A stretch of 64,000 nucleotides of DNA from Gracilinanus agilis (Eukaryota). The stretch spans positions 112,060,184 through 112,124,183 of the forward strand of contig NC_058133.1 of assembly GCF_016433145.1 (NCBI RefSeq), read 5' to 3'. The translations under genes were made by a program, and so were the position numbers. Below, in pieces: positions 31,980 through 63,553 of the stretch (the first letter of the stretch is position 1; each line of letters opens with the position of its first letter). The notes under the pieces are model-generated. The model was not told where the DNA came from, searched no databases, and worked only from the letters and a program-made list of their open reading frames with translations.

Positions 31980-32880
31980 AACAACTACAACAAACTCCTA
32001 CAAGCCTGTGGGAAGCCTCCCATCTGAAGCAGGGCGTGTCCTGCGAGGCAGATTCTGGAGCCATTCAGGCTTCCGGTCTGCCAATTGGAGGGGGGTTCGG
32101 GAACCAGCGGAAGTGCCTTTCCCACTCCCCCGTACCTTCCGGTTCTTCTCTCTCCTCCGCTTCACCCCGCCCCCGACAGTCTCAGGAGGCGGAGCAGCGT
32201 TACAGTCAAAGTTAGGGCGGCGCCGCCTCCTTCCAGGAAACGCTTCCCTTTTCCCTCTTACCCAGCCCCTTACAGCACCCTCCCTAAGAGGGGGGTCCTA
32301 CCCAGAGCCAGCTCCTGGCCCTGCCAGTTAACGGGGAGCGGACACGCCTGGTAGGGAGAGAAGCCAGTGCCCTTGCTCCGGCCTCCGCGTGCGTCTTCTA
32401 CGGGTGCCGGATCGCCGTCTTGGTCTTTGGCCGGGTTCGCCTCGCAGCCATGGGGGCGTGTCCCCGCCGCGGGGCCTGGCTCCTCTGGGCGTTGGCGCTG
32501 CTCGGCCTGCCGCGGGTCCGCGGTGAGGAGGGCTTGAGGAGGACGGGGGGGGGGGGAAGGTGCTGAGGGAGGGATGCGGTGGGGACGGCCACCTACCCTT
32601 TGCCCACCCCACCGGCCCCTCAACTTCCCGCCTAATGGGGTGCGCACCAGGCTCCCTTCCTGTGGCTAATAACTCCAGTCTTTTAGATGAGGTTGTAATG
32701 ACCCACGCTTTGGGGGATTCTGGCTTTCCAAAATGCTCACAATCGCACTGTGGATTTATGGAAATGGATTCCAAGTCTTTCCATGAATCTGGCGTCTATC
32801 GATCACCAGCTGTGTGTCGGGCTCTCCGGACCACAGGCTGAGAATGAAGATAAAAACGAGGCCTTTTGCCGGCCTCAATC
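31980..32880. promoter_or_regulatory. CpG island / TATA-less promoter of the CD55/CD46-like gene
   Basis: Only strongly CpG/GC-rich stretch in the window. ETS/GABP-type sites CTTCCGG (32070-76, 32136-42) and CGGAAGTG (32108-15), CCAAT (32081-85), GC boxes CCCCGCCCCC (32165-74) and GGGCGG (32215-20). Sites are motif matches only. Confidence 0.85.
32450..32522 (+). CDS. CD55/CD46-like: Exon 1: signal peptide MGACPRRGAWLLWALALLGLPRVR(G)
   Basis: ATG in strong Kozak context (gcagccATGG) inside CpG island; hydrophobic leader ending LGLPRVRG/NC, like human CD55 LCLPAVWG/DC; donor G|GTGAGG at 32523, phase 1. Confidence 0.93.
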
Positions 32881-34402
32881 TAATCAATTCGGGGGATAAT
32901 CGAGCTTGGTAAATTGTCTAAGGGGGTTACTGGAAAGAAGGAAGACCAGGATTTTTTGGATAGCCTTTAAAGACCAAGGGGGAGTGGGTTTCGCGGCAAC
33001 CCACCTCGCCCCAATTTTTGTTTGTTTTTTATTTTTGTCTAGAGAAAGAAACCTTAGAATAACCGAATAGCCTCACTGAATGAATTTTTTTTTTAAACCC
33101 TTACCTTCCAGCTTAGAATCAATACTGTATTAAAAAAAACAAAGACTCATGTTCTGTCTTAGAATTGATCATTTTGTTTTGGTTCCTAGGCAGAAGAAAG
33201 GATTAGAAAATGGGGGTTAAGTGACTTGCGCCAGGATCACTCAGCTAGGAAGTGTCTGAGGCTACATTGGAACCTAACACCTCTTATCTCTAAACCTGGC
33301 CCTCAATCCACCTAGCTGGCCCCAGGGGTGACTACCATACTAGAACGAAAGAAGTTACCCATCCAAAGAATTTCTAGGTGGTGGCGTTTTTGATCACAGA
33401 GAGAATGGATAGATGAGGTATCTTTGTTTTAAGTTGCCTAAGAAAGTTGTGTTATTGTGACCTGTATCTGGGGTTAATATGGGGGACAAATAAAGGCGGG
33501 GATGGTTTGCACTAATGCTGATTTGAGCAAACAATACTGAAAGAGTATGGAACGCCCCACTTGTAATACTATCTTATACAGCTCTTAAGTTGGAAGAAAC
33601 GCTCTTCAAATCCTAATATTAGTGTAGAATTATTGTGTGTGCTTTTTTTTAAGTTATAACTGAATCATTAGTCCAATTTGAAGTTGACTGAATCAAAAAG
33701 AAGGAATGAAAAAAAGGGTATTCAGAGTTGACTGCCATTCCATATATGCCCTTCCTTTCTAAAATTACTTGAAAATAATCATTTCACTGGTGGGTTTAGG
33801 GCTCTACAGGGAGAATTGTTTTATAGTAATAATTCATACTTTGTTAGAGCAGTTGAAAGCTCAAATCTTGGAGCTGTTTCTATTGATGTAGGACTAGAAA
33901 GGGAACTAGAGATTGTTCAATGAGGTTTCAAAATCAAATCTTTGATTAACACAATGCCTCCCTAAAACATAAATTCGTGCTGGTAATTTTTGTTAGTAAT
34001 TTTAACTGTGATATGACCCAAATCATACCAAACTTTTTCTATAAATATATATATACCAAGCATAAAAAGAAACCTGTTTTTGTAGTTGAAAAGGAGGAGA
34101 AAGGAATCAGCTTTTCTATAGTGCCACTCTATGCCAGAAACTGTGCTAAGCACTTTACAAATATTAACTCATTCCATGCTTTAAAATAACCCTCACAATA
34201 ACCCTATTGCTGTTATCCTCATTTTTCAGTTGAGGAAACTCAGGCAAAGAATTTAAGTGACTTTCCTAGGGTCTTACAGCTAGTGACCATCTGAGGCTGG
34301 ATTTGAAAATATGCTTAGAAAAAATAAGATTCTTTTCATGAATAACTCTCCATTCTCGATGGAATTGGGTATGGTTTGTAATTGTATAATCACTTTTTTT
34401 AG

Positions 34403-34591
34403 GTAATTGTAGTACTCCTCCAACAATTCCTTATGCTCATCCAGAAGAAAGCTATGATGCTGATAAAACCTTTGGTGATGGAGACACCATAACTTACAAA
34501 TGTGATACTGGTTATGCTAAAATACCTGGAAAATCAAACTCAGTTACTTGCCAGGGTGCGGAATGGTCAAAAATCCCACAATTTTGTAATC
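34403..34591 (+). CDS. CD55/CD46-like: Exon 2: CCP1 (CD55 CCP1-like)
   Basis: ttttttttag acceptor, GTAAGT donor, 189 nt, phase 1-1; TITYKC...KIPGKSNSVTC...WSKIPQFCN resembles CD55 VITYKC...KIPGEKDSVIC...WSDIEEFCN. Missed by ORF track. Confidence 0.95.
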
Positions 34592-36000
34592 GTAAGTTGT
34601 TAACTTATGTTTATTTTTAAGGTAAATAGTTTGCTTGTTAAATACTAAGTACATAAACTGGATAAAGGCAGCATGGCCTGATGGATAAGACACTGGACAC
34701 AGTCTGGGTCCATATTGTGTCTCGGAGAGTTAAATAATTTTTCTGTGCCATATTTTCCTTATCTGTAAAATGAGGAGATTAGACTTAATGCCCTCTAAGG
34801 TCAAAACCAGCTCTAAATCTAGAATTCTTTGAATTTTAACATTGTAAGTAACCCTAACAGCTTATTTCTTTTTCCTATCTCCCAGTCTTTATCATTTCTC
34901 CATGTTTATTATATTTTCTTTTTCTTTCTGTAGGACCAGTTTGAAGGATATATAATGTTAAAGTTGCTTAATTTGCATTTCTTTGATCTATACTGAGGTT
35001 GAAATTTTTTTTCAAGTTATTACTGATAGGGTGCTTTTACTTATAAATTGTCCTTTTATGCAAAGTGAATTTAGACTTATCCTTTAATATTTGCTAGTTC
35101 CCTATTTTAGATGCTGAGTTGTCATATAATTTTTGATATAATATTTCTATTGTGTCTTATACATAGTAAACCTTAATATTTGTTTTATTGAATTATTGGA
35201 TGTTTTTTGTTTATAATTTTATTCTGTTGAATTAGTATGACTTGCTCTATAATTTCTTGTATTCCTTTAATAATTTTATATGCCCATCACAACTGAGATA
35301 AAACATTCTCCTTTTAATTTTTAATGATTATGTTTTCATGTTTAAGTCTATAATATAGATACCACTTTTTATGTATAAGTTGCTTAAGTTTTGTTTTTTG
35401 TCATATTGCTCTCTGGTTTTCCAAAAAATATTTGTTAAATAATCCTTAGTCTAACTTTTATTTTCCACAAAATTGATCAAACCATATACACATACATATG
35501 AATATGTGCGGATCTGTTTCTATGATCTTTATTCCACTCCATTGGTCTTCTCCCCCCTCCCCTCCCACACAAATGAAATAATTTTGGTAATCAGCACCAC
35601 TCAGTTCAAAATTTATAGGGAGACTTAGACAGGAATTGAACAGGATTAAGAGGGTGGGGGTGTTACATTCTGCAATGTTGGAAGGAGCACTCATATTCAG
35701 TAAGATATTTTCTGACTCATACTTCACTTATTTAAAGGCACTTAGCAAGCAGCCTCCATGAGGTAGTATACAGCAAAGAACCAAAAGTAAACAAACATAG
35801 GCCTCTTAAGAGGCCAAAATAGATATGATGAAGTCTTGACAGTAATGGTTCTTGTATTTTAGGGATGATACTTTCCTCATAGGTTAATCTATTTTACACA
35901 TTTCTAAGTTTGTTAGCTATCTGATTTCAAAGCCCATGCTAAGTTAGAAAGCAACAAATTATAGAATCCCAAAATCTGAATTGGAAGGGACCTTATAGGT

Positions 36001-36525: not shown

Positions 36526-36529
36526 ATAT

Positions 36530-38900: not shown

Positions 38901-41504
38901 ATTTTTGATAAAAGAAAGTGGTTTTTAAAAGAGGCTGAAGCAACAGTTGGCAATCTGTAAATGGAATATAGGATTCAGATTTAACAATCAACTACAAGAA
39001 CTAAAAGGTAAATCTAGGGATGTTTAGCACTAGGACAAAGAACCTTACACATCCCAAGTGCCTTGAGGGAGAAATGTAAGTATCTATGTGGGTGTGGCAG
39101 AGTTAGCCTATAACCAATCATACCCCCTCCAGCTAGTTGATGCCATAATAAAAGGGGCCTATAACATGTTTTAAATAAAGCACAAAGACTTGTTTATACC
39201 TTATTACCTTTTTAAAAAATATGCAGTTTCACTGCTAGACTTGGCAAGGCAGCTTACGATTGACTGGCAAAAAGTTGGTCACATTCCTGGTGGCTTTTCA
39301 AAAGCTAAACCTGCCAATCCTGGAGATAGCCCCATTCATTCACTCCTTTATTCATTTTTTTGTGTCCTGCAGCAGATTGACTCACCCAGGGGAAATCCAT
39401 TTTGTATAGGGAGCATAGAGGGCCAGGAAACAGATTGTGGAGTGTGACCCCTACACTCTACCAGAGCACATAGCAAGAGGTTGATAATGGTTTGGGGTGA
39501 GGTGTTTTATTGCCCTCAGCCCCACTGTCCACAGCATCTTCCCAACTGGTCAAGTAGGAGACCCGGAATCCAGCAAAGAACACAGAATCAGTGGAAATAG
39601 CTCTGCAGAGAGAAGAGAACCAACTATAGATTTAAGAAGGAACTAGTGCCACACTGAGGAGAGGAGCAGGCCACAGGAACCTAGCTTGAGCCACCTGCTC
39701 AACAGTTGCCCTCAGATGGTGCGGACTGATGACACTTAAGAAAAGAAAGGACATTAAGCCCTGTGATACTAGAGACATTAGTTACTTAGGTCACATATCT
39801 TTCCTGCATGCTCCCTTCACTATCAGTGTATTCTTTGTTTAACCTCACTCTTAACTGATGCTTTGTGTATCTGGGGTTAGAATGTACCCCAAGTTTATGG
39901 TGGTGGCAGCGCGAGATAGTAGAAATGTTGTTTGGCTACTGTTACCATCCTGTCTTAGAAAATGTCTTTTCCTTGAGCTCATATCTATAGGCTAACTATT
40001 AAAAAGATAAACATGCTGGTTGGAACTTGTGAGCTATAATTTTAGGAGTTTGAACCCACGAAATTACTTTGAACCCTGGAGGTAATGGTTTTTCACTTTT
40101 GGGACCCAACTTAAATCATCTGAATGCTAGGTTTAGAGGAAGGTGCTACATGAAGGTGCTATAAAAAAAAAAAGATTATTCTACATGGTATTATGAATAC
40201 TTAATGGTAGTTGATATTTTTAATGGTGACACTAGATTACCAAAACAAATGAAATTATATTCAGCATATTTGTTAAGGAGGCAAAGAAATCTAAATTAAT
40301 ACTTTTGAATTTTATTCAAAAACCTTTTTTAAAAAAATTAAACTATTTTGGTGTTTAGGAGGGTAATCTATTTACACAGGAAATGTATTCATGTGGAATA
40401 GCCCATTTCCAAAGAAATAGAAATGATGCTATATTTTAGATATGTTCTAATATACCATCAGTTTAAAGTATGAAGTACTTTTAAATTCAATATTTCTTGA
40501 GCACTTACTAGTTTACTTCATGTTTACATTTCTTGGGTAAAATACTATGCTCATGAGACACAAGAGAATGTAGAAAACAAATCCCTGCCCTGCAATATAT
40601 TAATCTTTATAAGAAGACCTGACTGGTAAATAATTAAGGAATATTTACAATGCCATTTGTCAGTTGCATTGAACTTAGTACAGACTAATCAATCTAGTAG
40701 AGACCTGGAACTCTACCTTCTCCCCATGTTAATCCACTAATCTGAATTGAAGATATCCTGATTACTTGTTGAATGAGTTAAAACTCACTTACCTTAACCT
40801 TTATGATTCTCTGGCTCCAGACTGCTATTTAACCTTTCATTTAGCCATCTATAAGAAAACCAGGGCCTGTTCAGCTCAAGCATCTTGTGACCTACCCTGC
40901 CACTAAGAATATTCTCACTTCCTCATGATCCTTTTCCCTTTTAGCTTGCCTTAGGAAAAGGAGTCATCAGTGATAACATTGCTATTAGAATAGATATAAC
41001 AATTGTTTGGGAATTCCTGTAACTTCCTTCTGCAGACCAAAACTCCCTTGCCTGACTCTAATTTATGCATGTTATTTCCCTCACTAGAAATAAACTTCTT
41101 GGAGAAAGCTGTACCACTTTAGTAAATGTAACCCTGCTACCTAGCAGATAGATGTACCTGTTATATAGTAGGTACTTAATAAGTTCTTTTTCATTCATTT
41201 GATTATCAAGAGATTTCTAGAAGAAATGAGTCTTAAAGGTGATGAGTGATAATATGTAATAAAATATAAAATGACATCATCTCTATTGCCTGTACCATTG
41301 AACTCATTCTCATTCAAAGACTAAAGAATATTTTTGATATATAGAGTACCAATTATGAGGTTTTTTTCTTTGTAAGCTTTTTGTAGAAAATATTTTGATC
41401 AACTATTCAAAATATTTTTCCTTTTGCTAGTCTTCTTGACATGTATCTGTTTTTAATGATGACTGAATTCCTTTATTTCTTATTCTTTTTTCTTTTATTC
41501 CCAG

Positions 41505-41696
41505 GGAGCTGTGATCAGCCACCCCGGTATAATACTATGCAACCAGATAGTGCATTCATAAATAAAAATTATTTTCCTATTAATAGCACTGTGACTTTTG
41601 TATGCCGGCCTGGACATTCTCTCAGTAAATTAGGTCCACTCGTCAGTACTTGTCAGGATGATGGAACGTGGTCACCCATCTCAGAGTCTTGTAAAA
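41505..41696 (+). CDS. CD55/CD46-like: Exon 3: CCP2 (CD55 CCP2-like)
   Basis: Long pyrimidine tract + cccag, GTGAGT donor, 192 nt, phase 1-1; NYFPINSTVTFVCRPG resembles CD55 NYFPVGTVVEYECRPG. Confidence 0.95.
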
Positions 41697-42149
41697 GTGA
41701 GTAATTCTATCATTATATTGTATCTTACTAGGGTTTTTGGGAATTTTTCATTTATTTATGTTGAACTTTCAAAACCATATTTTTTTCCTATGATGCATTT
41801 TTCATACTTAAGCTGGCATCAACTTTCCAAAGAATCTTTATAGTGTTAATTTTATTTTTAGTAATAATTTTCATTGATGCCTTCTGTTTTTATATCAGTA
41901 ATTTCTGAATATAGTTCTCTCCCATTCTCCCACTCAGTGATCCTTCCTTGTAAAAAAGGAAAAAACTACTATGTTGATGACATCTAACAATTTGCATCAT
42001 TTTACACTCATAGTTTCCCACTTCTCTACCAAAAAAGGGAAATTGATTTCTGCATCTCCTTTGGTGGAAATTTAATGATTAAGATTTCTTAGCAGTTGGC
42101 TTCATTTTAGGACCTTTTCTTTTACTATAGTTAAGTATATCATCCTATT

Positions 42150-44264: not shown

Positions 44265-44364
44265 AAAAACCATGCCCAACTCCAGAAGCACTAGATAATG
44301 GTCGAATTATAACACCAACTGATCTCCTATTTGGTTCAGAAATTGAATATTTTTGTAATGAAGG
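44265..44364 (+). CDS. CD55/CD46-like: Exon 4: CCP3 first half
   Basis: tttttactag acceptor, GG|GTAAGT donor, 100 nt, phase 1-2; KKPCPTPEALDNGRIITPTDLLFGSEIEYFCNEG. Confidence 0.95.
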
Positions 44365-44479
44365 GTAAGTTATTTCTTAAGCAAGTGGAGCATGAATTAA
44401 CTCATTTAGTTTTGTTATTTTGTTTTTCTGTTTTTAGGGCTAGTAAAACATTCATTAAAACTGTACATAGGCATCCTTC

Positions 44480-46839: not shown

Positions 46840-47487
46840 CAGGAGAGATTTTGTAAATGAGATGACTATCCCTGGAATGACGTGAAAAATTAGGTAGAAA
46901 GGATGGGGAAAGGTATGCAAGTTCAGGTAAAAAGTATGTAATGCAGTGCCTCCAGCACTATGCCTGAAGTTAGGAAGCCCTGAGTTCAAATCCTTTTTTA
47001 GATACTTGCCAGCTGTGTGTGAGCAAATTGCTTAATTCTGTTGACCTCAGTTTCCTCATTTATAAAATGAGCTTAAGAATGAAATGATAAACCACTCTGG
47101 TATCTTTGCCAAGAAAATCCCGAGAGGGATCACAATGAGTCAGATAGAACTGATCAGCAACAAAACAATATAAGTTAAACGTTGAGATTTTAAAAATTAG
47201 TTGAGGAAACATTGAGTAAAACTGTCCAGCAAGGTCAGAAGCTTCAAGATTCTTGTTGACTTTTAATTCTTATAGTCTAATATTAAGTCTATCTAAAGGT
47301 TGGGCATAGTGGCACTTATAGGTGTCTTTGTGTGATTAAATTGCAAAGTTTCAGTTGCCATTTCCATGATATACTTTTTGAACCTTTATCAAAGCTTTGA
47401 TGTAACTATAGTTTATCAAGATGGAGTTACATACCAATCTCTTATATTATCCTAGAAGTCATATAACATATAACATTTTCTCTTCAG

Positions 47488-47573
47488 CTATCGTTTAATA
47501 GGTGATGCTGTTAGGCTCTGTGCCATTTCTAACAACCAAGTTTTATGGAGTGGTGAACCTCCGTTTTGTGAAA
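47488..47573 (+). CDS. CD55/CD46-like: Exon 5: CCP3 second half
   Basis: ttttctcttcag acceptor, GTAAGT donor, 86 nt, phase 2-1; YRLIGDAVRLCAISNNQVLWSGEPPFCE. Confidence 0.95.
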
Positions 47574-50278: not shown

Positions 50279-50473
50279 TTGTTTCTTGTTTACCACCTCC
50301 AAATATCGACAATGGGAAGCACAATGGTGGCCACGAGAATGTCTTTACCTATGGTGAGGCAGTGACTTATCAGTGTGATTTACGTGCTCAAGATAAATTT
50401 TCGCTTATTGGAGAAGCCACCATTACTTGTGCTGAAAATGGAGACTGGAATAAGCCACCTCCTGAATGTAAAG
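50279..50473 (+). CDS. CD55/CD46-like: Exon 6: CCP4 (CD46 CCP3-like)
   Basis: tttcccataag acceptor, G|GTGATG donor, 195 nt, phase 1-1; CLPPPNIDNGKH...AVTYQC...DKFSLIGEATITC...PECK resembles CD46 CTPPPKIKNGKH...AVTYSC...DPFSLIGESTIYC...PECK. Confidence 0.95.
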
Positions 50474-50899
50474 GTGATGGATTTCTTTAGGATTTTTTCC
50501 TTCTTGATCTATAAATAGTAAAACACTATTTTGAAAATAATCATAATGGGTTTAGCAATTTGTAGGAGTAGAAATAATATTCTTGTCCTATGTTTCTTTT
50601 AAATTTTTTCTTTTAACTTAATTTGGTTTGGCTGGTACAAATTAAAATTTGATTCTGTTCTGGAAATGTTACATATTCCTAAGTCTTGAGATGATATAGC
50701 ATATGCTTTTTGAGGTCTAACCTTTTACCAAATGCCTTTGATTCAAGATCTTTCAAAAAGTAATTTGTATTTCTTTCCACAGACCACTCTATCTTGACAC
50801 TTAAAATTATAGAGAAACTTTATATTTTAAAACAAACAGTAATTTCATTACAAAATTTTATTCTTTTAATTAATAGTAGGGATTTATCATAAATTATGT

Positions 50900-52760: not shown

Positions 52761-53259
52761 GAGACTTCAGAAATGAAAGATTTTTTTAATGGTATTTGTT
52801 CCTGAAATAAGAATTGATTGCATTATGGAATTCAAGACTTGAAGGAACAATGGATATCACTTAATCTAAACTCTTATTTTATAGATGAGAAAACTTAAGT
52901 CTCAGTGAAGGGAGGTGGTATATCCAAACCCACACGAGGTTTAATAGGAGGAGAGAAGGAATGTAAAGTATCCTTTACTCCTAATCCTAAATTCCTTACT
53001 TCAAATCCAATGATCCAGATCCAGTGATCTTTCTGTTGCATCATGAGTTTTTTGGAATCTAATATATCTGGAATCAAAATGTTATTTACTTTATTTTAAT
53101 CATGCTCATCATTTATTTTGTTGCTTTTTGCTGTTGTGAATAGTTTCCTATTTCTGCTTTTTCTGTCCTCAAGGTACCATTACACATATACCAACTACTG
53201 CTCTATTCCTACCTCTTCATAACAAACTTTTCAAGAACTTTCTAAATTTTCTTTTTTAG

Positions 53260-53442
53260 TGGTCAAATGTACAACTCCATACGTTCCCAACGCAGTCCAG
53301 ATATCAGGATTTGGATCCTCTCATACTTATAAGGACACAATTTTTTTTGAATGTAAAGAGGGTTATATCTTACAGAATAATAGCAAGATTACCTGTGAAG
53401 CTGATAATAAGTGGAAGCCTGCACTGCCAATTTGTACTAAAG
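53260..53442 (+). CDS. CD55/CD46-like: Exon 7: CCP5 (CD46 CCP4 / C4BPA CCP4-like)
   Basis: cttttttag acceptor, G|GTATAA donor, 183 nt, phase 1-1; VVKC...QISGFG...YKDTIFFECKEG resembles CD46 VVKC...QISGFG...YKATVMFECDKG. Confidence 0.95.
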
Positions 53443-53751
53443 GTATAAAAATAAGTCTTTTTTTCACTTCTTTCCACTTTGTTATTTCTAATATGAGTAA
53501 TAACACATAGTAACTATAGAAATAATTATTTTTCACTTGTGCAACTTGTACCCATTTACTGTTGTTGTTATACATTTGCCAGTGTAACCTGATTTAATTC
53601 TTAATATTTTTCAAGGCTCAACTCAACTTCTATTTATTATTTGAGGTTATTTTATTCTCCTGGTTTTAGTGTTTGCCTTCACTCCCCTACAATAAGACTT
53701 TCTATTTCCATTTATGTTTATATGTTTTGTGTTAATTAAGTGCATTGAAGC

Positions 53752-54040
53752 TGTAAGATTAAAATTAATATCCAATAACTCTTAAGTATTTTATAAAATT
53801 TATTAATAATCACTTGAAGTAGAAGAAATAAAAAGAACAAAAGTAAAAGCCTGAGGGAAAAAAACATGTGGGTAAAATTTCTTGCCAAGCTCTCACCTTC
53901 AGCCTCCACAGCCTCGTTCCCAGAAGAGCACAAGGAGGGGAGCTACACAAAACTTATATCCTCCCATGTTAGCACTTAACATGAGAAGGAACATGGGAAG
54001 CTGGGATTTAGAGTCCTAGGGAACAAGTTCTAATTATACA
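53752..54040 (-). mobile_element. Solo LTR (289 bp) downstream of exon 7
   Basis: TGTAAG...TATACA ends; perfect 4-bp TSD AAGC (53748-51/54041-44); same family as 30632-30930. Confidence 0.8.
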
Positions 54041-54049
54041 AAGCAGATG

Positions 54050-56584
54050 TTTCATATGTAGGTGGGACTTGGACCTAGATTTTCCCAGTGTTTAGACCAG
54101 ATTTCTGTCCATTCCAGTGATTCTTTGTCCCTACCTGTCATTAAAACTGTTTTCTGTACACCATTGGCCATTTCCTTATTCCTATCAATCTCCCTTATTC
54201 TGTTCACCACCTTAATGCCCATTCCATTCAAGATCTACCTCCCCCTCCTACTGTGCTCTTAAAATACTAGTAAGGTAAGACTCTTGCTTTTATCTTAAAC
54301 TTTTTCTCTCTCCTTCCGTCTTTGAAACTGGCTCCCTTCTGGTCACAACCTCTGGTTTTACTTTCATTCATACCCTCCATCATGGTCATGGTGGGGGAAT
54401 TTGGGATCCCCCTTGCTTTTCTATTGCCTCTTTTGGCTATCACTTTGCCACCACCATTCATTCAGTAACCTCTCCTCCTTTAAAGTTCACTCACTCCATA
54501 TATATTAATTAAGATCCTGCTAGCAGTTTTCTACCAACATCTAGAACATTCTTCTTTTCTCACTGAGTTCATTGTCAGGCTCAAGTTCTTTCCACTCCCC
54601 AACTCCTACCCCATACTATGGGACTCCAGCACTCTCACTGATAGTCTCTTAAAAGCTCTCCTCTCTACTTTCTTCAGCATATGTTTTTGCTGTGTCCTGA
54701 TTCTCTACTCTATATCAGCTACACCTCGAGACAGCCATACCCCTGATCTTCCCTTCACTTAAGTATTTCACCATCAGGCCCATCATTTCCCTCTGTGATC
54801 CCAATTTGTGTCATTCTACCTCTCCCTCTTGTCACAGCCTCAGACTTTATTCTTTGTTCATACCATAGCCTCCAATCCTTCCACTTCTCCGTTCTTATGG
54901 GTCATCACCCATACATTGTCTACTTGCCCCCCCTGCCCAGCTGTTAATGTATTGGTGAGTTAATTCAGCACTGTACTGGTCTCTTTTCTTGGGGCTCTTA
55001 TGCCCTTTCTAGTCTTCCTCTGCTAGACTTCAGACTTAGGTTGTTATCATTGTCTGTTGCCTTTTGTTCTGCTCACGTGCTGAAATAAAGCTGGAAAAAC
55101 TCATGAAACTGTGCTAAGTAGGCCCTCTACAGATTTATGTTCTATAATCCTGTGGTGAAAATTTATCACACCAATACAGGACTCCAAGCTAAATAATAGG
55201 TTTATTGAGAGGAGGCCCACTTCACAATAAAGCTGGACCCTGGTCCCATCAGAACCAGAGACCCTGAGCCTTAGGACATGGCCTTTTTTATAGAGAGAAA
55301 TCTTAGGACATTGTGACAGTGATACAAAAATAGAAAAAGATGCTAAAATCTTTCAGTTAGGTGGTACTTAATTAGTGATACACCTTCTGATTAAGCAAGT
55401 GATTGTAAAAGATCACTTTGGGTGATGAGGCTATTATTTATTATTGCTGACCTTTTAAAGGTCCTTACACTCTTGGTGTCTCTTACTGACAATAATTAGG
55501 AGTCAGCAATTTAGAGAAACAAGAGGGGCCCTCTGCCTGTGTGACCATCTTGTGCTTGCACCCAAGCAGGGTGTGGTGAGCTTGGTAGTGACTTTTGGTT
55601 ATAAGCCTAAGCTGAAAAGGATGTAAACAAGATTTGATACCACCCTAAACTGTATCTTTCTTAGCTAATCCTTATAATTTTTATAAAGCAAATATGTCAC
55701 TTTGGCTATTCACTCAAAACTAATGATTATGTTATTAAAATAATCATAAGGGCTAATACTACTATAATCATAAAAGTGTGTAGGGGGTTTCACACTCACA
55801 CTCTCAAATGGGCCTTCACTCCTGCAAGACATTTCTTTTATGCCTCCCTAAGCAATCACTATTCACTCACCACAGCAGCTTTTCCAGATCTTTTTATCCC
55901 TCCTAAAACTTGTTACTTCCTTTCCCCTTACTCTCCAAGCTGAGAACTTTGCCCCATATTTACCAAGAACTCCCTCTTATTCCTTTAAAAATCTTATATC
56001 CCCTGTACCCCTTCTCTTTCTCTCTCCTTCTTTACTTTTATCTTTCATGAGGAGTTTGCTCTTCTTGAAGGTTGACCCTTTTATCCAGACTTAATCATTA
56101 ATCTTCATTTCACCCTGCTTACTGGCTGCTTTCCTAATGCCTTCAAATATGGTCATGTCTCCCCCTTCCTCCAAAAATCCTTATTTAATTTGTTCATTCT
56201 TCCTAGCTATTATCCCACACCTCTTCCATTTTGTGGCTAAATTCCCCTCAAGACAATCTACAGTTGGTGCTCCACATTACTGCCAAGTTCATCAAGCTGC
56301 AGGCTAGGAGTCATCCTCTACTCCTTGCTCATTTCTTATTCCCTCATTTCCAATATGTTACCCAATCCTGTTTTTATATCTTTAAACATTTTTTGTAAAA
56401 GACACTACTATTCCTCTATTATTACTACTTCCTCTAGTACTCTTTACTTTATATCCTAGACTTGCAATAGTGTGCTGGTTGGTCTCCCTGCCTCAAGTCT
56501 TTCTCCAGCACACTGTCAAATTGATCTTCCTTAATTGCAGGTCTAATCATGTTGCTCTCCCCCTCTCCCCCTTCATTTAACTCT
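54050..56584 (+). mobile_element. Degraded L2 LINE, left part (continues after the L1 at ~60864-61310)
   Basis: Endonuclease-like remnant (acacctcgagacagccatacccctgatctt, T-H-x-x-G-H-T-L-D-L-like); L2 3' motifs (ctccctgcctcaagtct..., gatccaatataaagtcctctg) split across the L1. Confidence 0.7.
55150..55791 (-). mobile_element. LTR-like element inserted in L2
   Basis: TGTGGTGAAA...TTTCACA ends with flanking L2 sequence continuing; AATAAA-like signal on minus strand; no clear TSD. Confidence 0.55.
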
Positions 56585-59500
56585 TAAAAAAATTTTTTTT
56601 CACTTTATTTTTAAACATTTTCCCATTTTTACAAGATTTATTTTCTTTCCCTCCATTCTTCCCTCCCCCCTCCCAGAGCCAACTAGCCATTCCACTGGAT
56701 TGTACAAATGATACCCATTTCCATATTATTCATTTTTACTATAGAGTGATTTTTTTAAGGCCTAAACCCCAAATCACATACCCATATATCATGTGATAAG
56801 TGATGTCATTTGTTTTGCTTTTGCATTTCTACTCCCACAGTTCTTTCTCTCAATGCGGATAACATTCTTTTACATAAGTCCCTCAGGAGTGTCCTTGTTT
56901 GTTGCATTGCTACTGGTAGCAAAGTCCATTACAATGGATTTTTCCACAATGTTTTACTTTCTATATACAGTTCTTCTGGTTTTGCTCATTTCATTCTGCA
57001 TCAGTTCATTGAAATTCTCCCACTTCATATGGAAAGCTTCCAGATCATCAATCCTTACAGCACAATAGTATTTCCTCACCATCATATACCACAATTTGTT
57101 CAGCCATTCCCCAATTGAGGGACACTCCCTCATTTTCTAATTTTGTTGCCACCACAAAGAGCGCAGCTATGAATATTTTTGTACATGTATTTTTCTCTAT
57201 TATCTCTTTGGGATACAAACCCAGCAATGGTATTGCTGGATTAAAGGGCAAGCAGTCTTTTAAAGTCCTTTGGGCATAATTCCATATTGCCTCCCAGAAT
57301 GGCTGGATTAATTCACAACTCTACCAGCGATGCATTAGTGTCCCGATTTTGCCACATCCCCTCCAATATTTGTTATTTTCCTTTACTGTCATATTGGCCA
57401 ATCTGCTAGGTGTGAGGTGATAGACCTGAGTATTGTTTTGATTTGCTTTTCTCTAATTATGAGAGATTTAGAATACTTTTTCATGTGCTTATTGATAGTT
57501 TTGATTTCTTTATCTGAAAACTGCCTATTCATGTCCCTTGACCATTTGTCAACTGGGGAATGGCTTGATTTTTTGTACAATTTACTTACTCCTTATAAAT
57601 TTGAGAAATGAAACCTTTGTCAGAGGTTTTTGTTATAAAGATTTTTTTCCCCAATTTGTTGCTTCCCTTCTAATTTTGGTTGCATAGGTCTTATTTGTAG
57701 AGAAACTTTAATTTAATATAATCAAAATTATTAGTTTTACATTTTGTATCTCCTGCTTGGTCTGAAATTCCTTCCTTTCCCATAGATCTGACAGATATAC
57801 TATTCTATGTTCACCTAATTTGTTTATGATTTCCCTCTTAAGTTATTTCCCACTCTGAGTTAATCTTGGTATAGGGTGTAAGATGTTGATCTAAGCTTAA
57901 TTTTGTCATATTGTTTTCCAATTCTTCCAGCAGTTTTTGTCAAATAGTGGGTTCTTGTCTCAAAAGCTGGGATCTTTGGGTTTATCGAACTCTATCTTAC
58001 TACTGTCATTTACTCCAAGTCTATTCCATTGATCCATCCTTCTATCTCTAAGCCAGTACTGTAGTTTTGATGATCACTGCTTTATGGTATTATTTGAGAT
58101 CTGGTAAAGCTAGGCCTCCATCCTTCACATTTTTTTTCATTATTTCCCTTTGATATTCTTGATCTTTTTATACTTCCAGATAAACTTTGTAATAATTTTT
58201 TCTAATTCTATGAAAAAAAGTGTTTTGGTAGTTTGATAGGTATAGCACTGAATAAGTAAATTAATTTTGGTAGGATTGTCACTTTTATTATATTAGCTCA
58301 TCCTACCCATGAACAATTGATGTTTTTTCAATTGTTTATATCTAGTTTTATTTGTATGAAGAGTGTTTTGTAGTTATGTTCATATAATTCTTGAATTTCT
58401 TTTGGCAAGTAGATTCCCAGGTATTTTATCTTGTCTAGAGTAATTTTAAATGGAGTCTCTCTTTCTCTTGCTGATGGGTTTTGTTGGAAACATAGGAGTG
58501 CTGATGATTTTTTTATGTGGGTTTATTTTGTACCCTGAAACTTTGCTAAAGTTAATGATTATTTCTACTAGTTTTTTTAGTTGATTTTATTGGATTTTCT
58601 AGGTATACTATCATGTCATCTGCAAAGAGTGATAATTTAGTTTCCTCATTGTCTACTTTGATCCCTTCAATTTTTTTTCTTCTCTAATTGCTACTGATAG
58701 CATTTCTAGTACAATATTAAATGGTAGTGGTGATAATGGGCATTCCCTGATTCATTCCTGGTCTTATTGGGAAGGCATCTGACTTATCCTCATTGTAGAT
58801 GATATTTACTGATGGTTTTAAATAAATACTATTTATTATTTTAAGTAAAGACCCTTCTATTTCTATGTTTTCTAGTGTTTTCAATAGGAATGGGTGCTAT
58901 ATTTTGTCAAAGGTCTTTTCTGCATCTATTGAGATAATAATGTGATTTCTATTAGTTTGGTTGTTGATATGGTCAATTATGTATGTGGATGGTTTTCCTA
59001 ATATTAAACCATTTTTGATACCATAATCTCTGCCTATTGAATAATACTTTTATCTACTATGATAATGAAAACAATTTTTAAGAGTTATAGATATCATTTT
59101 TCCATATAGGAATATAATCAGTTTGACCTTACTGAAGCCCTTAAAATTTTCCCCTCCTTTTTCTCATTTACCTTTTTTCTTGTTTTCTTGAATTTTGTAT
59201 TTGGACATCAAATTTTCCATTTAGTTCTGGTCTTTTCTTTAGGAATGCTTGGAAATCTTCTATTTTGTTAAGTGCCCATACTTTCCTCTGAAAGTATATA
59301 GTCAGTTTTGATGGGTAGGTGATTCTTGGTTGTAGACCCAATTCTCTTGCCTTCTTGAATATTATATTCCAAGCCTTGCGGTCCTTTAGTTTGGAGACTG
59401 CCAGATTCTGTGTAATCCTGACTGGACCTCCTTGACATATGAATTGTCTCTTTCTGGCTGTTTGAAATATTTTCTCCTTGGCCTGGAAGGTTTTGAATTT

Positions 59501-60845
59501 GGATATACCATTCCTGGGTGTCATCTTTTGGGGATTTATTGTAGGGGGTGCTCTATGGAGTCTTTCAATGTTTATTTTGCCCTCTTGTTCAAGAATATCG
59601 GGGCAGTTTTCTTGGATCATTTCTTTAATATGATGTCAAGGATTTTATTTTGTTCTAGGCTTTCAGGTAGACCAATAATTCTCAAATTGTCTCACCTGGA
59701 TCTGTTTTCCAGGTCATTTTTCTTTTCAATGAGATATTTCATGTTTCCTCCTATTTTTTCATTCTTTTGATTTTGCTTTATTAATTCTTGCTGTCTTGTG
59801 AGGTCATTAGCTTCTTCTTACCCAATTCTAGTCTTTAAAGACTGATTTTCAGCCTATGATCTTTAGATTTTCCTTTTTGGTTTGATCTGTCCTGCTTTTC
59901 ATGGCTTCCAGCAGGTCAATTCTGGTCTCCAATTTGTTTATTTGATTTCTGTGTCTCTTTTTCCATATAGGTAATTTTGTTTTTTAAGCTGTTATTTTCT
60001 TTTTGTATTACTTTAATTTCTTTTTCCCACTTTTCATCCCATTTTTCTTCTAGCTTTCTTGCTTGGTTCTTGAATTCCTTTTTTAGTTCCTCGAGAGCTT
60101 GTGACAAATTTCCATTTTGGGGGGAAAGTTTGGATGTGTTTGCTTGTTTTTTTCACTCTCTGCTGTTGCTTCTGTATTTTGCTCTTTTTCTCCATAGAAA
60201 TTTTTCAGGGTCGAGTTTTTTTTGCTGTTGCTTATTTCTTTTGCCACTAGAGGATTAGAGTTCTTGCATGTTGGTGGTCATTGTTTTCTTAGCTTCTGTC
60301 TTGCACAGCTTCGCCTTGGTAGTATCTTCCCTTCCCTGTCAGAAGTCTGAATGAGGGCAGGTAAATCTGTGATTTTTTTTGTGTGTAGCAAGCTTTAAAG
60401 TGTTTTGCCCTAAGGCTATCTTTCCAGCCCCTGCTGCCTCAGCTGTGGCCAGCCTCGCTTCTGCCCAAGCTCAGCATTCTGCTGCCCAGGCTCTGCTCCC
60501 TTCAGCCTTGGGTCCCAAGTCTCGCTGCCAAGGCCTTCCCACTGTCCTTATGGTTAAGTCTTTTGTGCCTTCAGCCGCCCCCAAGAATTTAGAGATTGCC
60601 CTGACCCTCGCTCTGACTCTGGTGCAGTAGATGGTATGGGGGAAGAGTGATCAGCTTGCCAATTGATAAGTGTATTTTCTCCCCCTTATAGCATGGGGAT
60701 CCCCAAACACTGCCTACCTTTAAGGCTGCATCCAGTGGGAGAGCCCCTTTATTTGTCTGATTTTGATTTCTGTCCTTTTTAGACATTTTGTAATCAGTTG
60801 GAAGGAGATTCAGAAGGCTCCTCCTTCTATGCTGCCATCTTAGTT
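56585..60845 (-). mobile_element. L1 with 5' end and ORF1 but internally deleted ORF2, antisense in intron 7
   Basis: 5' start AACTAAGATGGCAGC; ORF1p C-terminus (59168-59620, ...RITYPSKLTI...) and coiled-coil fragments; ORF2 resumes at WFNIRK near 59012; L1 3' UTR and A-rich tail; 18-bp TSD CCCCCTTCATTTAACTCT (56567-84)/CCCCCTTCATTCAGCTCT (60846-63). Confidence 0.93.
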
Positions 60846-61327
60846 CCCCCTTCATTCAGCTCTAATGCCCTCTTTATCAACTGCAAGATCCAATATAAAG
60901 TCCTCTGTTTAATGTTCAAAATCTTTCATAACTTGAGCCTCTTTTACTTTTCAGACTTCTTAAATACACTCTCCTACTCTCTTGTGTACTCCCATGATCC
61001 AATGGCACTGACCCCCTTTGCTTTGCCTCCCACAAGATACTCCATCTCCTAACTTGAGGGATTTTACTTACTGTCCTCTATACCTGACTTATCTCTGTGT
61101 TCTGGCTTCCATTGAGACTGAGCCAAAATTCTAAGTACAAGAAAACTTTTCCTATTCCCCTAAATCCTAGTTTCTTCCCTCTGTTGGTTATTTCTAATTT
61201 GTCTCACACATATGTATGTATATGTATGCATGCATTTACACACATACCTTGTTTGAACAAAGTTGTTTATATGTTGTCTCCCCCATTTGATTGTGAGCAC
61301 CTTGAGAACTCAGAGTTTCCTTAAAGG

Positions 61328-61645
61328 TGTGCAGTTTAAAAATGTTCTCCCAGGACTCTACCACAGCTTCCTCAGACACATCCCACTTCCTTTGTGGGAT
61401 GTGTCTGAGAAAGTATAAGAGAGAGAGGCGCCGGTGCTTTTGGCTCCTTTTTCCACCAGAAGCGCCTTTTTTTGAGAATCGAGGAGAGCCTTGGTCCCCT
61501 TGGAGATCTAATTCCTTGCCTTCTCCCTTACCTAACTTTTTCTAATCTAAATAAACCCAGCTTTTCTATCCCTAAAGTTGTAGCCTGATTTTTGTTGAGC
61601 TCCTATGGGTTTGGGTCAATTTCCCACCAGAGCTCGGGACTACCA
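61328..61645 (+). mobile_element. LTR-like element containing a perfect 16-bp hairpin
   Basis: Starts TG; TATA-like GTATAAG and AATAAA (~61550); ends approximate. Confidence 0.5.
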
Positions 61646-61930
61646 GCTCATCTACCTTCCTCCTATTCCCTTTACCTTCATTTCCCTTCCTTCTCCTACC
61701 TTCCTACCTCACTCCCTTCTTTCAACTCACAAAATTTTTCTTTTTTTTTTGGTCTTTCTTTGTATTCCTAGCTCTTAACATAGTCCCTGGCACTTATAAT
61801 GAAGAACTTACAATGAAGAAAAATTGCAGGAATTTTTATTTATGGAAAAGATAGAACTCTTACTTTATATTAAGATCAGTGACTCTTAAGCTTTTTAAAA
61901 ATAATCTACTTTCCTTTTTTGAATTTCTAG

Positions 61931-61978
61931 CACCTGTTCTTCCTTCCAGTCAAGCACCACCTGCCACAAGTAGTCCAG
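61931..61978 (+). CDS. CD55/CD46-like: Exon 8: STP mini-exon 1 (APVLPSSQAPPATSSP)
   Basis: gaatttctag acceptor, 48 nt, phase 1-1, resembles CD46 STP-A VLPPSSTKPPALSHS; donor CAG|GTTCAG is non-consensus. Confidence 0.8.
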
Positions 61979-63505
61979 GTTCAGTAATTCCTCATTTAAT
62001 ATATATTTTTAAAGAATCTTATAGTACTTTGGGTTATCATTCATTCACTATTTTCATTGAATGCAAAATGCAGTGGTGATACAAATGAAATAAGATGTGT
62101 AGTAAAAAGAGAAAAGAGAAGGGCAGCTAGGTAGCACAGTGGGCAGAGTGCCAGGCCTGGAGAATCTGGGTTTAAATTTGGCCTCAGACACTTACTATTT
62201 GTGTAACTCTGGGTAAGTGAACCCCAGTTGCCTAGCCCTCACTGTTCCCCTGCTTTAGAATAAATACTTGATATTAATTTTAAGACCAAAAGTAAGTTTT
62301 AAAGAAAGAAAAGGGAAGAAAGAAAGGCCAAGATTCAATTCTTCCCACCTCCATCCCCTCCAGTGTTTATTTCCAATGGTATTTAGTGACTTGCTCACTT
62401 ATCTTCCATAAGCTAACATGGTGGTGCCTTTTGTGGAATTCATCATAATTTTTCAGAATTCACTCTGTTTATTGTGTTCTGAACTGTGGAGGTGTTCTAG
62501 GTCTGAGAACTGTTCTCACATGACCAGTGCAGTATCACAAGCACTCACCTAATACTTTCTCCTGTTCTTGCTCTGAACCTATTGCTGGGAGAAGGAATTG
62601 GGATATTGGTCCACTTCTTCAAATGATACCTGGACATTTCATTCAGTCATAGAAGCATAGCTAGAAGGGACCATGGAAACTATTTAGTTCAGTCCCCTCA
62701 TTTTATAGATGAGGAAATGAGGCCTAAGAAAGATGTGGTCCCAAAGTTGAAGGGATTAAAACTCCCTTGAAGTACTCTTCTGCTTGGAACCAATACACAG
62801 TATTGATTCCAAGACAGAAGGTAAGAGTTTAAAAAAAATGCTTTAAAAAATGTTATTTTTTGTCAACAGTGATAAAAAATATATCATGATATTTTTTGCT
62901 CCTGAGCAAGCTATAAAATATCTGAGCTAGGAGTTATTCCTATGTGTTGATATATACTGCAATTGAATGAATCTTCTGACTAAGATTCCCAAATGGGATA
63001 TGGATATGGTAATATCCCATAAATATATTCTACTTATAGATGTGTGTACACACACACACACACATATATATATAGCATTTGTTTATATATATGTATATAT
63101 AACACAGCTATGTTTTATAAGGATTCATTTTATTTTATTATCACTTTTACTTTTTAGCAGTTCATCTATACTCTTGTGTCCATTGTGAACTCATGATTGT
63201 ATTTCACGCTATCAAGCAATCTATTATGTATTTAATTTGATTTTTGCAGTTTTTCATAGGAGCTGAGCACTTAATATAGGTTTGTAAAGTTTCCATGGCA
63301 ATGGAGTTAAAAATTATTAAATAGAAAAGAATAGCAAATGGTCAATAATAATTCAAGTTTATTAGGCAAAGAGAAATTGGAGTTTTTGTTTCTGGAGATT
63401 AAAAGAACAAAACTTTTAATATCTATACTGATGAAATTAGAGTAGTGGTTCCTAAAATTTTTTTTTAAATTATTAAATATGCCTTTCTTTTGGGGACTTT
63501 TCTAG

Positions 63506-63553
63506 GAACAACTGTTACTTCTCAAACAAAGCCACCTGTCTCAAGACAACCAG
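63506..63553 (+). CDS. CD55/CD46-like: Exon 9: STP mini-exon 2 (GTTVTSQTKPPVSRQP)
   Basis: cttttctag acceptor, 48 nt, phase 1-1, shares KPPVS with CD46 STP-C (GPRPTYKPPVSNYP); same GTTCAG donor as exon 8. Confidence 0.8.

What the first reader, a model, noticed from the sequence alone, without database searches (positions are those of the whole stretch)
32450..63553. Five-CCP complement regulator combining a CD55 (DAF) N-terminus with a CD46 (MCP) C-terminus
Seen in sequence: a clean nine-exon ORF encoding leader + 5 CCPs + 2 STP exons. Established: eutherian CD55 and CD46 each have 4 CCPs, and CD55 CCP2-4 are homologous to CD46 CCP1-3. Here the leader, CCP1 and CCP2 match CD55, including the FCN|RSC junction with its N-glycosylation sequon across the splice site. 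CCP4, CCP5 and the STP exons match CD46 (FSLIGE, VVKC..QISGFG, VLPSS..PPA, KPPVS). From memory, exon sizes 192/100/86 equal CD55 exons 3-5 and 183 equals the CD46 CCP4 exon. Inference: either a retained ancestral therian regulator (CD55 = loss of CCP5, CD46 = loss of CCP1) or a marsupial fusion or conversion product. The 5-CCP chicken regulator Cremp, recalled as a DAF/MCP-like hybrid, is the obvious comparison. I cannot confirm whether this marsupial architecture is already published.
Basis: partly seen in the sequence, partly recalled or inferred. Interest (0 to 1): 0.85.

Follow-up and report, generated by a model that had tools for sequence, protein, structure and literature searches.

The report
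Marsupial CD46 keeps a fifth domain
This is the agile gracile opossum's copy of the complement regulator CD46, already predicted in public annotation, and it carries one extra DAF-like module at its front that placental CD46 lacks, most likely an ancestral leftover and not a CD55-CD46 fusion.

Summary
Nine + strand exons (32450-63553) have AG/GT borders and consistent phases. They encode a leader, five CCP modules (the third split 100/86 bp) and two STP exons. The spliced 371 aa are 100% identical to NCBI's predicted 'membrane cofactor protein-like' of Gracilinanus agilis (433 aa). That protein continues past the window into a transmembrane helix and a cytoplasmic tail.

Only CCP1 is DAF-type. 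The leader resembles placental CD46 leaders. CCP2-4 group with placental CD46 CCP1-3 (99/94). Both alternative cytoplasmic tails align with CD46 tails. Marsupials also have a separate four-CCP CD55, so a CD55-CD46 fusion is very unlikely.

The CCP order 1-2-3-4-5 also occurs in salamanders, a caecilian and platypus, and the platypus protein sits in the CD55 clade. Retention of an ancestral five-CCP layout is therefore favoured (about 0.6). Secondary capture of the CCP1 exon cannot be excluded, because the CCP1 tree is unresolved.

CCP5 is a caveat: it sits nearer C4BPA CCP4 than placental CD46 CCP4.

Orthologues are annotated in about 12 marsupials, some with predicted CCP1-skipped isoforms. 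I found no paper describing this architecture. I could not obtain transcript junction evidence. Interest is moderate.

The parts
32450..32522 (+). Exon 1, coding part: start codon and signal peptide (24 aa plus 1 base). It lies in the most GC-rich 2 kb of the window.
   Evidence: ATG at 32450 and GT donor after 32522. GC is 0.485 in 32001-34000. The leader resembles placental CD46 leaders, not CD55 leaders.
34403..34591 (+). Exon 2: CCP1, the DAF/CD55 CCP1 type. Placental CD46 lacks this module.
   Evidence: AG/GT borders, phase 1-1, 189 bp. Pfam Sushi 6.7e-9. The best single-domain PDB match is CD55 CCP1. It falls in the c1 clade. Mean identity among 11 marsupials is 71.6%.
41505..41696 (+). 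Exon 3: CCP2, homologous to placental CD46 CCP1 and CD55 CCP2.
   Evidence: AG/GT borders, phase 1-1, 192 bp. It groups with CD46 CCP1 at 98/94 and SH-aLRT 90.
44265..44364 (+). Exon 4: first half of CCP3 (100 bp, phase 1 to 2).
   Evidence: The split CCP is the same type as CD46 CCP2 and CD55 CCP3.
47488..47573 (+). Exon 5: second half of CCP3 (86 bp, phase 2 to 1).
50279..50473 (+). Exon 6: CCP4, homologous to placental CD46 CCP3.
   Evidence: It groups with CD46 CCP3 (SH-aLRT 89). Mean identity is 45% to CD46 CCP3 against 38% to CD55 CCP4.
53260..53442 (+). Exon 7: CCP5, the c5 type shared by CD46 CCP4, C4BPA CCP4 and platypus c5.
   Evidence: The CKVVKC junction occurs in 117/120 placental CD46 clusters and 0/16 CD55 proteins. 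In trees it sits nearer C4BPA CCP4 than placental CD46 CCP4.
61931..61978 (+). Exon 8: first Ser/Thr/Pro-rich exon (48 bp, phase 1-1).
   Evidence: It is absent from Monodelphis isoform X6.
63506..63553 (+). Exon 9: second Ser/Thr/Pro-rich exon (48 bp, phase 1-1). The gene continues beyond the window end.
   Evidence: Residues 372-433 of P0182 (segment, TM helix, tail) are not in the window. The gene spans 47.7 kb.

Best explanation
This is the Gracilinanus agilis orthologue of CD46 (membrane cofactor protein). It is a type I membrane glycoprotein with a signal peptide, five CCP modules, two STP exons, a short proline-rich segment, one transmembrane helix and a cytoplasmic tail.

CCP2-5 correspond to CCP1-4 of placental CD46. 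By orthology (inferred, not shown) they should bind C3b and C4b on the animal's own cells and act as cofactor for factor I cleavage.

The extra N-terminal CCP1 is the same module type as CD55 CCP1. The most likely history is this. The stem-mammal regulator had the module order 1-2-3-4-5. It duplicated into a CD55 lineage and a CD46 lineage before monotremes and therians split. Therian CD55 then lost module 5, placental CD46 lost module 1, and marsupial CD46 kept all five.

Because every CCP exon is phase 1-1, exon 2 can be skipped in frame. Predicted isoforms in three other marsupials do exactly that and give a placental-style four-CCP CD46.

Sub-confidences: CD46 orthologue about 0.9; retention of CCP1 rather than later capture about 0.65.
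For: - Gene model: canonical splice sites and phases. The spliced protein is 100% identical to P0182, 'membrane cofactor protein-like [Gracilinanus agilis]'. Pfam finds five Sushi repeats.
- C-terminal end: P0182 ends in a 23-residue hydrophobic helix followed by QYKKKGK and a tail.
- Trees: marsupial CCP2-4 plus placental CD46 CCP1-3 form a clade, 93/84 with 40 rows and 99/94 with 61 rows. Joining them to CD55 costs 17.6 lnL, p-AU 0.027.
- Leader: it resembles CD46 leaders.
- Tails: both alternative marsupial tails align with placental CD46 tails. TY(I/V)TDEIHKE...MKERF matches camel AYLTDESHRE...MKERF (E=4e-10). KKKGKNATIP..ASY matches cheetah KKKGKTEVSASY (E=1e-8).
- Separate marsupial CD55: a 1-2-3-4 protein with a mucin-like region exists in Sarcophilus and wallaby. 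It forms a 100/99 clade with placental CD55 and platypus.
- Ancestral order: 1-2-3-4-5 occurs in axolotl, newt, a caecilian and platypus, and the platypus protein is in the CD55 clade.
- Placental CD46: none of 120 clusters has a type-1 module, and 106 are 2-3-4-5.
- Age and constraint of CCP1: marsupial CCP1 is about as far from mammalian CD55 CCP1 (40-48%) as from turtle and amphibian CCP1 (42%), whereas CD55 CCP1s are 53-58% alike among themselves. CCP1 is as conserved among 11 marsupials as the other CCPs, 71.6% against 62.6-71.9%.
- Exon skipping: isoforms joining the same leader directly to CCP2 are predicted in Monodelphis, Trichosurus and koala.
Against: - The CCP1-only tree (66 columns) is a polytomy. 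AU tests reject neither 'sister of marsupial CD55 CCP1' (p=0.34) nor 'outside all mammalian CD55 CCP1' (p=0.38).
- Identity of CCP1 is somewhat higher to marsupial CD55 CCP1 (47.7%) than to placental CD55 CCP1 (40.4%).
- For CCP4-5 the marsupial gene groups with C4BPA CCP3-4 (89/77), placental CD46 groups with platypus (96/92), and holding marsupial plus placental CD46 together is borderline rejected (p-AU 0.041). Unequal rates may explain this: CCP5 is 48% identical to marsupial C4BPA and 46% to placental C4BPA, against 40% to placental CD46.
- Fine-scale synteny (next to CD34?) could not be read.
- There is no transcript junction evidence for this species. Two small runs of the same organism hold the CCP4 exon but were not listed as holders of the CCP1 exon.
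- No function was assayed.
Confidence: 0.62

Rival explanations
1. CD46 orthologue that gained CCP1 secondarily. The therian CD46 ancestor already had four CCPs (2-3-4-5). In the marsupial stem a copy of the CD55 CCP1 exon (phase 1-1) was inserted into CD46 intron 1 by exon duplication or unequal exchange within the RCA cluster.
For: Marsupial CCP1 is more like marsupial CD55 CCP1 (47.7%; 52% for the window against Sarcophilus) than placental CD55 CCP1 (40-42%). The AU test does not reject a clade of the two marsupial CCP1 types (p=0.34). Separate 1-2-3-4 and 2-3-4-5 modules are common in reptile RCA proteins, and C4BPA also starts at type 2. The RCA cluster shows other module shuffling, such as the dasyurid 1-2-3-4-5-4-5 and koala 1-2-5 proteins.
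Against: The ML tree does not join the two marsupial CCP1 types. Marsupial CD55 CCP1 is closer to every other group as well, which points to a slow rate. The divergence of this CCP1 from all CD55 CCP1s is as deep as from turtle and amphibian CCP1. A CD55-clade protein with 1-2-3-4-5 in platypus implies a five-CCP ancestor at the time of duplication.
Confidence: 0.27
2. The 5' part of CD55 (promoter, leader, CCP1, CCP2) was fused or converted onto the 3' part of CD46 in marsupials.
For: CCP1 is DAF-type. The FCN[RK][ST]C junction, NYFP in CCP2 and the CKKK linker are frequent in CD55 (15/16, 14/16, 12/16) and rare in placental CD46 (0/120, 0/120, 8/120). NCBI names orthologues 'DAF-like' in some species.
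Against: The leader is CD46-type. CCP2 groups with CD46 CCP1 at 98/94. CCP2-4 with CD55 is rejected at p=0.027. NYFP-like strings also occur in platypus, turtle and axolotl, so they are ancestral. CCP2 is only 37% identical to Sarcophilus CD55 CCP2, so there was no recent conversion. A complete separate CD55 persists in marsupials.
Confidence: 0.04
3. The five-CCP form is a minor or annotation-driven product. In vivo, exon 2 is mostly skipped and the working protein is an ordinary four-CCP CD46. This rival concerns usage, not ancestry, and can hold together with either history above.
For: Isoforms without CCP1 are predicted in three marsupials. Runs X2 and X3 of the same organism hold 0.83 of the sampled words of the CCP4 exon but were not listed among holders of the CCP1 exon stretch.
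Against: CCP1 is intact and as conserved as the other CCPs in 11 species from all major marsupial orders, and it is 95% identical between the two didelphids. Runs guessed to be RNA from a related organism hold 0.42-0.48 of the words of the exon-2 stretch, about the exon's own share. Most predicted isoforms include CCP1. The kind of run X2/X3 is unknown, and 5' exons are often under-covered.
Confidence: 0.15

Closest known systems
Placental CD46 / membrane cofactor protein (MCP)
   Same: The leader type is the same, and CCP2-4 form a clade with CD46 CCP1-3 (99/94). It shares the CKVVKC junction into the last CCP, short phase 1-1 STP exons that can be skipped, a single TM helix with a KKKG stop-transfer, and two alternative cytoplasmic tails that align with CD46 tails.
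   Different: It has an extra N-terminal DAF-type CCP (five CCPs, not four). CCP5 is nearer C4BPA CCP4 than placental CD46 CCP4 in trees. Cofactor activity is untested.
CD55 / decay-accelerating factor (DAF)
   Same: CCP1 is the same module type, and the N-glycan sequon across the CCP1/CCP2 junction is shared. CCP2-4 are homologous module types.
   Different: It is a separate gene in marsupials. CD55 has a different leader, no c5-type CCP, a long mucin-like region and no CD46-type TM helix or tails. The window's CCP2-4 lie outside the CD55 clade.
Non-mammalian and monotreme RCA membrane proteins with the module order 1-2-3-4-5 (axolotl 'DAF-like', newt, caecilian 'CR1-like', platypus 'DAF, GPI-anchored/CR1'); chicken CREM/Cremp as recalled and as cited in PMC7963485
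   Same: They share the colinear order of the five module types, and some are membrane-bound. The literature already notes that CD46 homologues vary from four to six or more CCPs (PMC7963485).
   Different: Those proteins carry further CCPs after module 5, and in the CCP2-4 tree they fall in their own class-specific clades or, for platypus, in the CD55 clade. No chicken CREM sequence was retrieved, so that comparison rests on the paper and on memory.
C4b-binding protein alpha chain (C4BPA)
   Same: Its CCP1-4 are module types 2-3-4-5. Monodelphis C4BPA is 46% identical to the window protein over CCP2-5, and CCP5 is closest to its CCP4.
   Different: C4BPA is a secreted eight-CCP protein with an oligomerisation domain (PF18453), without an STP region, TM helix or tail. 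It serves as the outgroup in the CCP2-4 trees.

Membership tests
CD46 / MCP | Four contiguous CCPs orthologous to CD46 CCP1-4 | tested here: inconclusive
   CCP2-4 form a clade with placental CD46 CCP1-3 (93/84; 99/94). For CCP4-5, monophyly with CD46 CCP3-4 is borderline rejected (p=0.041). Unequal rates are a possible cause.
CD46 / MCP | Type I membrane protein with an STP region followed by one TM helix | tested here: met
   There are two STP exons in the window. P0182 continues with a 23-residue hydrophobic helix and a basic stop-transfer.
CD46 / MCP | Two alternative cytoplasmic tails (CYT-1-like and CYT-2-like) | tested here: met
   Marsupial orthologues carry either the TY(I/V)TDEIHKE.. 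tail or the KGKNATIP..ASY.. tail. Both align with placental CD46 tails. The G. agilis model uses the second tail.
CD46 / MCP | CD46-type signal peptide exon | tested here: met
   MGACPRRGAW.. compares with horse MTASCARRGAPL.., while CD55 leaders are MSPA..-type from turtle to mammals. The comparison is a visual alignment of short, fast-evolving sequence.
CD46 / MCP | Position in the RCA cluster between CR1L and CD34 | not testable with these tools
   The contig is too large for DNA retrieval and no neighbours were listed. Other orthologues were not on record. Only chromosome-level co-location with C4BPA or CD55 can be inferred, from equal contig lengths.
CD46 / MCP | Factor I cofactor activity for C3b and C4b | not testable with these tools
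   Inferred from orthology only.
CD55 / DAF | CCP1-4 orthologous to CD55 CCP1-4 | tested here: not met
   Only CCP1 is the CD55 CCP1 type. Placing CCP2-4 with the CD55 clade is rejected (p=0.027), and that clade (100/99) holds a different marsupial gene.
CD55 / DAF | GPI anchor signal at the C-terminus | tested here: not met
   P0182 has a TM helix followed by a 26-residue cytoplasmic tail.
CD55 / DAF | Decay-accelerating activity | not testable with these tools
   No assay was possible. The motif matrices of PMC6683126 are not given in its text.
Chicken CREM / Cremp | Sequence orthology to the chicken membrane RCA protein | not tested
   No chicken CREM sequence was retrieved. Bird proteins in hand (Ammospiza, Motacilla 1-2-3-4; Nothoprocta ?-3-4-5-4-5) fall in sauropsid clades or are unresolved.

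The most novel reading that the evidence does not exclude
Marsupial CD46 may be a living intermediate. Optional skipping of the CCP1 exon would give both a five-CCP and a four-CCP protein from one gene, the state from which placentals later deleted the exon. The five-CCP form would combine a DAF-like N-terminal surface (decay acceleration or binding of the CD55 ligand CD97) with factor I cofactor activity in one membrane protein, as mouse Crry does by function.
Probability: 0.2. Interest if true: 0.6.

Novelty: new variant of a known kind. Interest (0 to 1): 0.4.

Why it matters
If retention is right, marsupials preserve the five-module layout from which both mammalian membrane regulators, CD55 and CD46, were trimmed in opposite directions. 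That gives a concrete, testable history for the RCA cluster. It also offers a natural experiment on what a DAF-type CCP1 adds to a cofactor protein.

It is a practical warning for annotation too. The same gene is called 'MCP-like', 'DAF-like' or 'CR1-like' in different marsupials, and opossum expression studies use the labels CD46 and CD55 without regard to this architecture.

It is not a new kind of system. The protein is already in RefSeq, and variation in CCP number among CD46 homologues is acknowledged in the literature (PMC7963485).

Tried and rejected
- Transcript evidence. The second (34200-34900) showed no depth at all over 34320-34750, even in the DNA-like run of the same organism, which is a filter effect and no finding.
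- Synteny. The look-up of encoding contigs gave no DNA or neighbours for P0182 because the contig is too large. The Petaurus and Vombatus isoforms were not on record.
- Upstream region. ORFs in 1-32000 show nothing CCP-like or obviously coding.
- CR1/C4BP-like long protein. Rejected, because STP, TM helix and tail follow CCP5 and no other STP-like phase 1-1 exon lies in 53443-64000.
- Lepore-type CD55-CD46 deletion fusion. Considered after the first tree, then rejected once a separate marsupial CD55 and the CD46-type leader were seen.
- Recent gene conversion of CCP5 from marsupial C4BPA. Rejected, because identity is the same to marsupial and placental C4BPA (48% against 46%).
- Whole-chain PDB E-values. 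They are inflated by multi-CCP chains, so I used them only for single-domain chains.
- Exon sizes of human CD46. PMC2118878 is held as abstract only.
- Regulatory motif test of PMC6683126. The motif matrices are not in the text.
- Literature searches for a marsupial CD46/CD55 architecture paper found none.
Full report
**What is in the sequence**

A six-frame scan for the CCP cysteine/tryptophan pattern finds complete modules only on the + strand, at 34390-34617, 41399-41701, 50278-50487 and 53223-53507. A half module lies at 47474-47578. Nothing CCP-like lies in 1-32000.

Reading the borders gives nine exons, each with an AG acceptor and a GT donor and with mutually consistent phases:

| Exon | Content | Coordinates | Length |
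|---|---|---|---|
| 1 | leader | 32450-32522 | 73 bp coding |
| 2 | CCP1 | 34403-34591 | 189 bp |
| 3 | CCP2 | 41505-41696 | 192 bp |
| 4 | CCP3, first half | 44265-44364 | 100 bp |
| 5 | CCP3, second half | 47488-47573 | 86 bp |
| 6 | CCP4 | 50279-50473 | 195 bp |
| 7 | CCP5 | 53260-53442 | 183 bp |
| 8 | STP | 61931-61978 | 48 bp |
| 9 | STP | 63506-63553 | 48 bp |

Exon 1 sits in the most GC-rich part of the window.

**Identity of the gene**

A search of protein-cluster representatives with CCP1 led to an Antechinus protein that is 63% identical over all five CCPs. A homologue search with that protein listed orthologues in about a dozen marsupials. NCBI names them 'membrane cofactor protein-like', 'complement decay-accelerating factor-like' or 'CR1-like'.

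One of them, P0182, 'membrane cofactor protein-like [Gracilinanus agilis]' (433 aa), is 100% identical to my spliced 371 aa. The window is thus from G. agilis (GCA_016433145.1), and the gene model already exists in RefSeq. The gene spans 47.7 kb, so about 16 kb lie beyond the window.

The missing 62 residues are a proline-rich segment, a 23-residue hydrophobic helix, a KKKG stop-transfer and a short tail. Pfam finds five Sushi repeats.

**Which known gene each part belongs to**

Single-domain PDB chains gave first leads. CCP1 matches CD55 CCP1. CCP2 is ambiguous between CD55 CCP2 and MCP CCP1. CCP4 fits MCP CCP3 better than CD55 CCP4. CCP5 matches MCP CCP4, Crry CCP4 and CR1 CCP4.

I then collected nine placental CD55, nine placental CD46, marsupial, monotreme, sauropsid and amphibian proteins and cut them into CCPs with an HMM. 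A tree of 140 single CCPs sorts them into five module types. I call these types c1-c5 from here on.

- The window's CCP1 falls in the c1 clade with CD55 CCP1.
- Its CCP2 is sister to placental CD46 CCP1.
- Its CCP4 is sister to CD46 CCP3.

A careful tree of the three-module block CCP2-4 gives marsupial gene plus placental CD46 at 93/84 with 40 rows and 99/94 with 61 rows. Forcing the marsupial gene into the CD55 clade costs 17.6 log-likelihood units (p-AU 0.027).

The leader (MGACPRRGAW...) resembles placental CD46 leaders such as horse MTASCARRGAPL.... It does not resemble the CD55 leader MSPA..., which is conserved from turtle to mammals.

The marsupial orthologues carry two alternative cytoplasmic tails, and both align with placental CD46 tails, E=4e-10 and 1e-8 in single comparisons.

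They also occur in platypus, turtle and axolotl. They are therefore shared ancestral characters that were lost on the long placental CD46 branch.

**Marsupials also have a real CD55**

Two representative clusters from the CCP1 search turned out to be 'CD55 molecule [Sarcophilus harrisii]' and an uncharacterised wallaby protein. They have the CD55 leader, modules 1-2-3-4 and a mucin-like region of about 350 residues. With platypus and placental CD55 they form a 100/99 clade.

An opossum uterus study likewise reports separate CD46 and CD55 transcripts with different regulation (PMC5012577).

A deletion-type CD55-CD46 fusion, which I considered after the first tree, is therefore out.

**Retention or capture of CCP1**

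Typing every CCP against five module HMMs shows the colinear order 1-2-3-4-5 in axolotl, newt, a caecilian and platypus. The platypus protein belongs to the CD55 clade yet keeps c5-type modules. None of 120 placental CD46 clusters has a type-1 module, and 106 are 2-3-4-5.

The simplest history has four steps:
1. A five-module stem-mammal gene duplicated before monotremes and therians split.
2. Therian CD55 lost module 5.
3. Placental CD46 lost module 1.
4. Marsupial CD46 kept all five.

Two further observations agree with this. Marsupial CCP1 is as distant from mammalian CD55 CCP1 (40-48%) as from turtle and amphibian CCP1 (about 42%), while CD55 CCP1s are 53-58% alike among themselves. CCP1 is also as conserved among 11 marsupials as the other modules, so it is a constrained domain that was present in the marsupial common ancestor.

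The CCP1-only tree is a polytomy, however, and AU tests reject neither placement (p=0.34 and 0.38). Identity is also slightly higher to marsupial CD55 CCP1. I put retention at about 0.65 and secondary exon capture at about 0.27.

**A caveat on CCP5**

In a CCP4-5 tree the marsupial gene groups with C4BPA CCP3-4 (89/77). Placental CD46 groups with platypus (96/92). Holding marsupial and placental CD46 together is borderline rejected (p=0.041).

Identity of CCP5 is 48% to marsupial C4BPA and 46% to placental C4BPA, against 40% to placental CD46. This is not a recent marsupial conversion. Slow evolution of CCP5 and C4BPA against a fast placental CD46 branch is a plausible cause, but module exchange in the cluster cannot be excluded.

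**Alternative splicing and expression**

Predicted isoforms in Monodelphis (X6), Trichosurus (X10) and koala (X5) join the same leader directly to CCP2. This is possible because all CCP exons are phase 1-1. Monodelphis X6 also skips both STP exons.

I could not see junctions.

Index look-ups give only hints. Two small runs of the same organism hold the CCP4 exon but were not listed for the CCP1 exon stretch. Runs guessed to be RNA from a related organism hold about the exon's share of that stretch.

**Mechanism**

Shown: the domain layout, the membrane topology, and the relationships above.

Inferred from orthology: CCP2-5 bind C3b and C4b and recruit factor I, as placental CD46 CCP1-4 do. The STP exons form an O-glycosylated stalk. 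The tails give isoform-specific signalling or sorting.

What CCP1 adds is unknown. A spacer role, a contribution to convertase decay, or CD97 binding (as for CD55) are all speculation. I did not test it.

**Novelty**

The protein is in RefSeq for many marsupials, and the literature already states that CD46 homologues vary in CCP number (PMC7963485). I found no paper describing a five-CCP marsupial CD46 with a DAF-type first module.

I rate it a new variant of a known kind, of moderate interest.

Noticed in passing
P0276 (Monodelphis domestica, not in the window): The 'ZP3R-like' protein has a CD55-type leader (MSPAA..), module types 2-3-4-5, a long Ser/Gly/Thr run and a hydrophobic C-end without a tail, which looks GPI-like. 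It may be a third membrane RCA gene in opossums. Its place in the CCP2-4 tree is unresolved.
   Followed up: partly
P0171, P0023, P0172, P0170 (Antechinus, Sarcophilus): Dasyurid orthologues have 6-8 CCPs through repeats of modules 4 and 5 (1-2-3-4-5-4-5, 1-2-3-4-5-5, 1-2-3-5-4-5). The Sarcophilus 'CR1L' protein reads 1-2-3-5-2-3-4-5, which is either a tandem duplicate or a merged model.
   Followed up: partly
P0047 (koala): A second koala copy with nearly the same leader has modules 1-2-5 plus a TM helix. It is only 48% identical to the window protein over CCP1-2.
   Followed up: no
P0073, P0095 (Sarcophilus, wallaby CD55): Marsupial CD55 carries a mucin-like region of about 350 residues made of repeated PAT/TNAPA units, far longer than in the placental CD55 proteins seen here.
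   Followed up: no
P0230, P0096, P0151 (platypus): The platypus protein belongs to the CD55 clade for CCP2-4 (100/99) but keeps one to four extra c4/c5-type modules. Its isoforms are named both 'CR1' and 'DAF, GPI-anchored'.
   Followed up: partly
window 34303-34691 and 50279-50473: Small runs X2 and X3 of the same organism hold 0.83 of the CCP4 exon's words but are not listed as holders of the CCP1 exon stretch. This could mean exon skipping, poor 5' coverage or index noise.
   Followed up: partly
window 59171-59620, minus strand: A fragment of an L1 ORF1 (Transposase_22 RBD-like and dsRBD-like domains) lies in the 8.5 kb intron between CCP5 and the first STP exon.
   Followed up: yes
window 28548-28700: A run of 153 N lies 3.7 kb upstream of the start codon. 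I left it untouched.
   Followed up: no
window 1-32000: There are no CCP exons or long convincing ORFs on either strand upstream of the gene.
   Followed up: no
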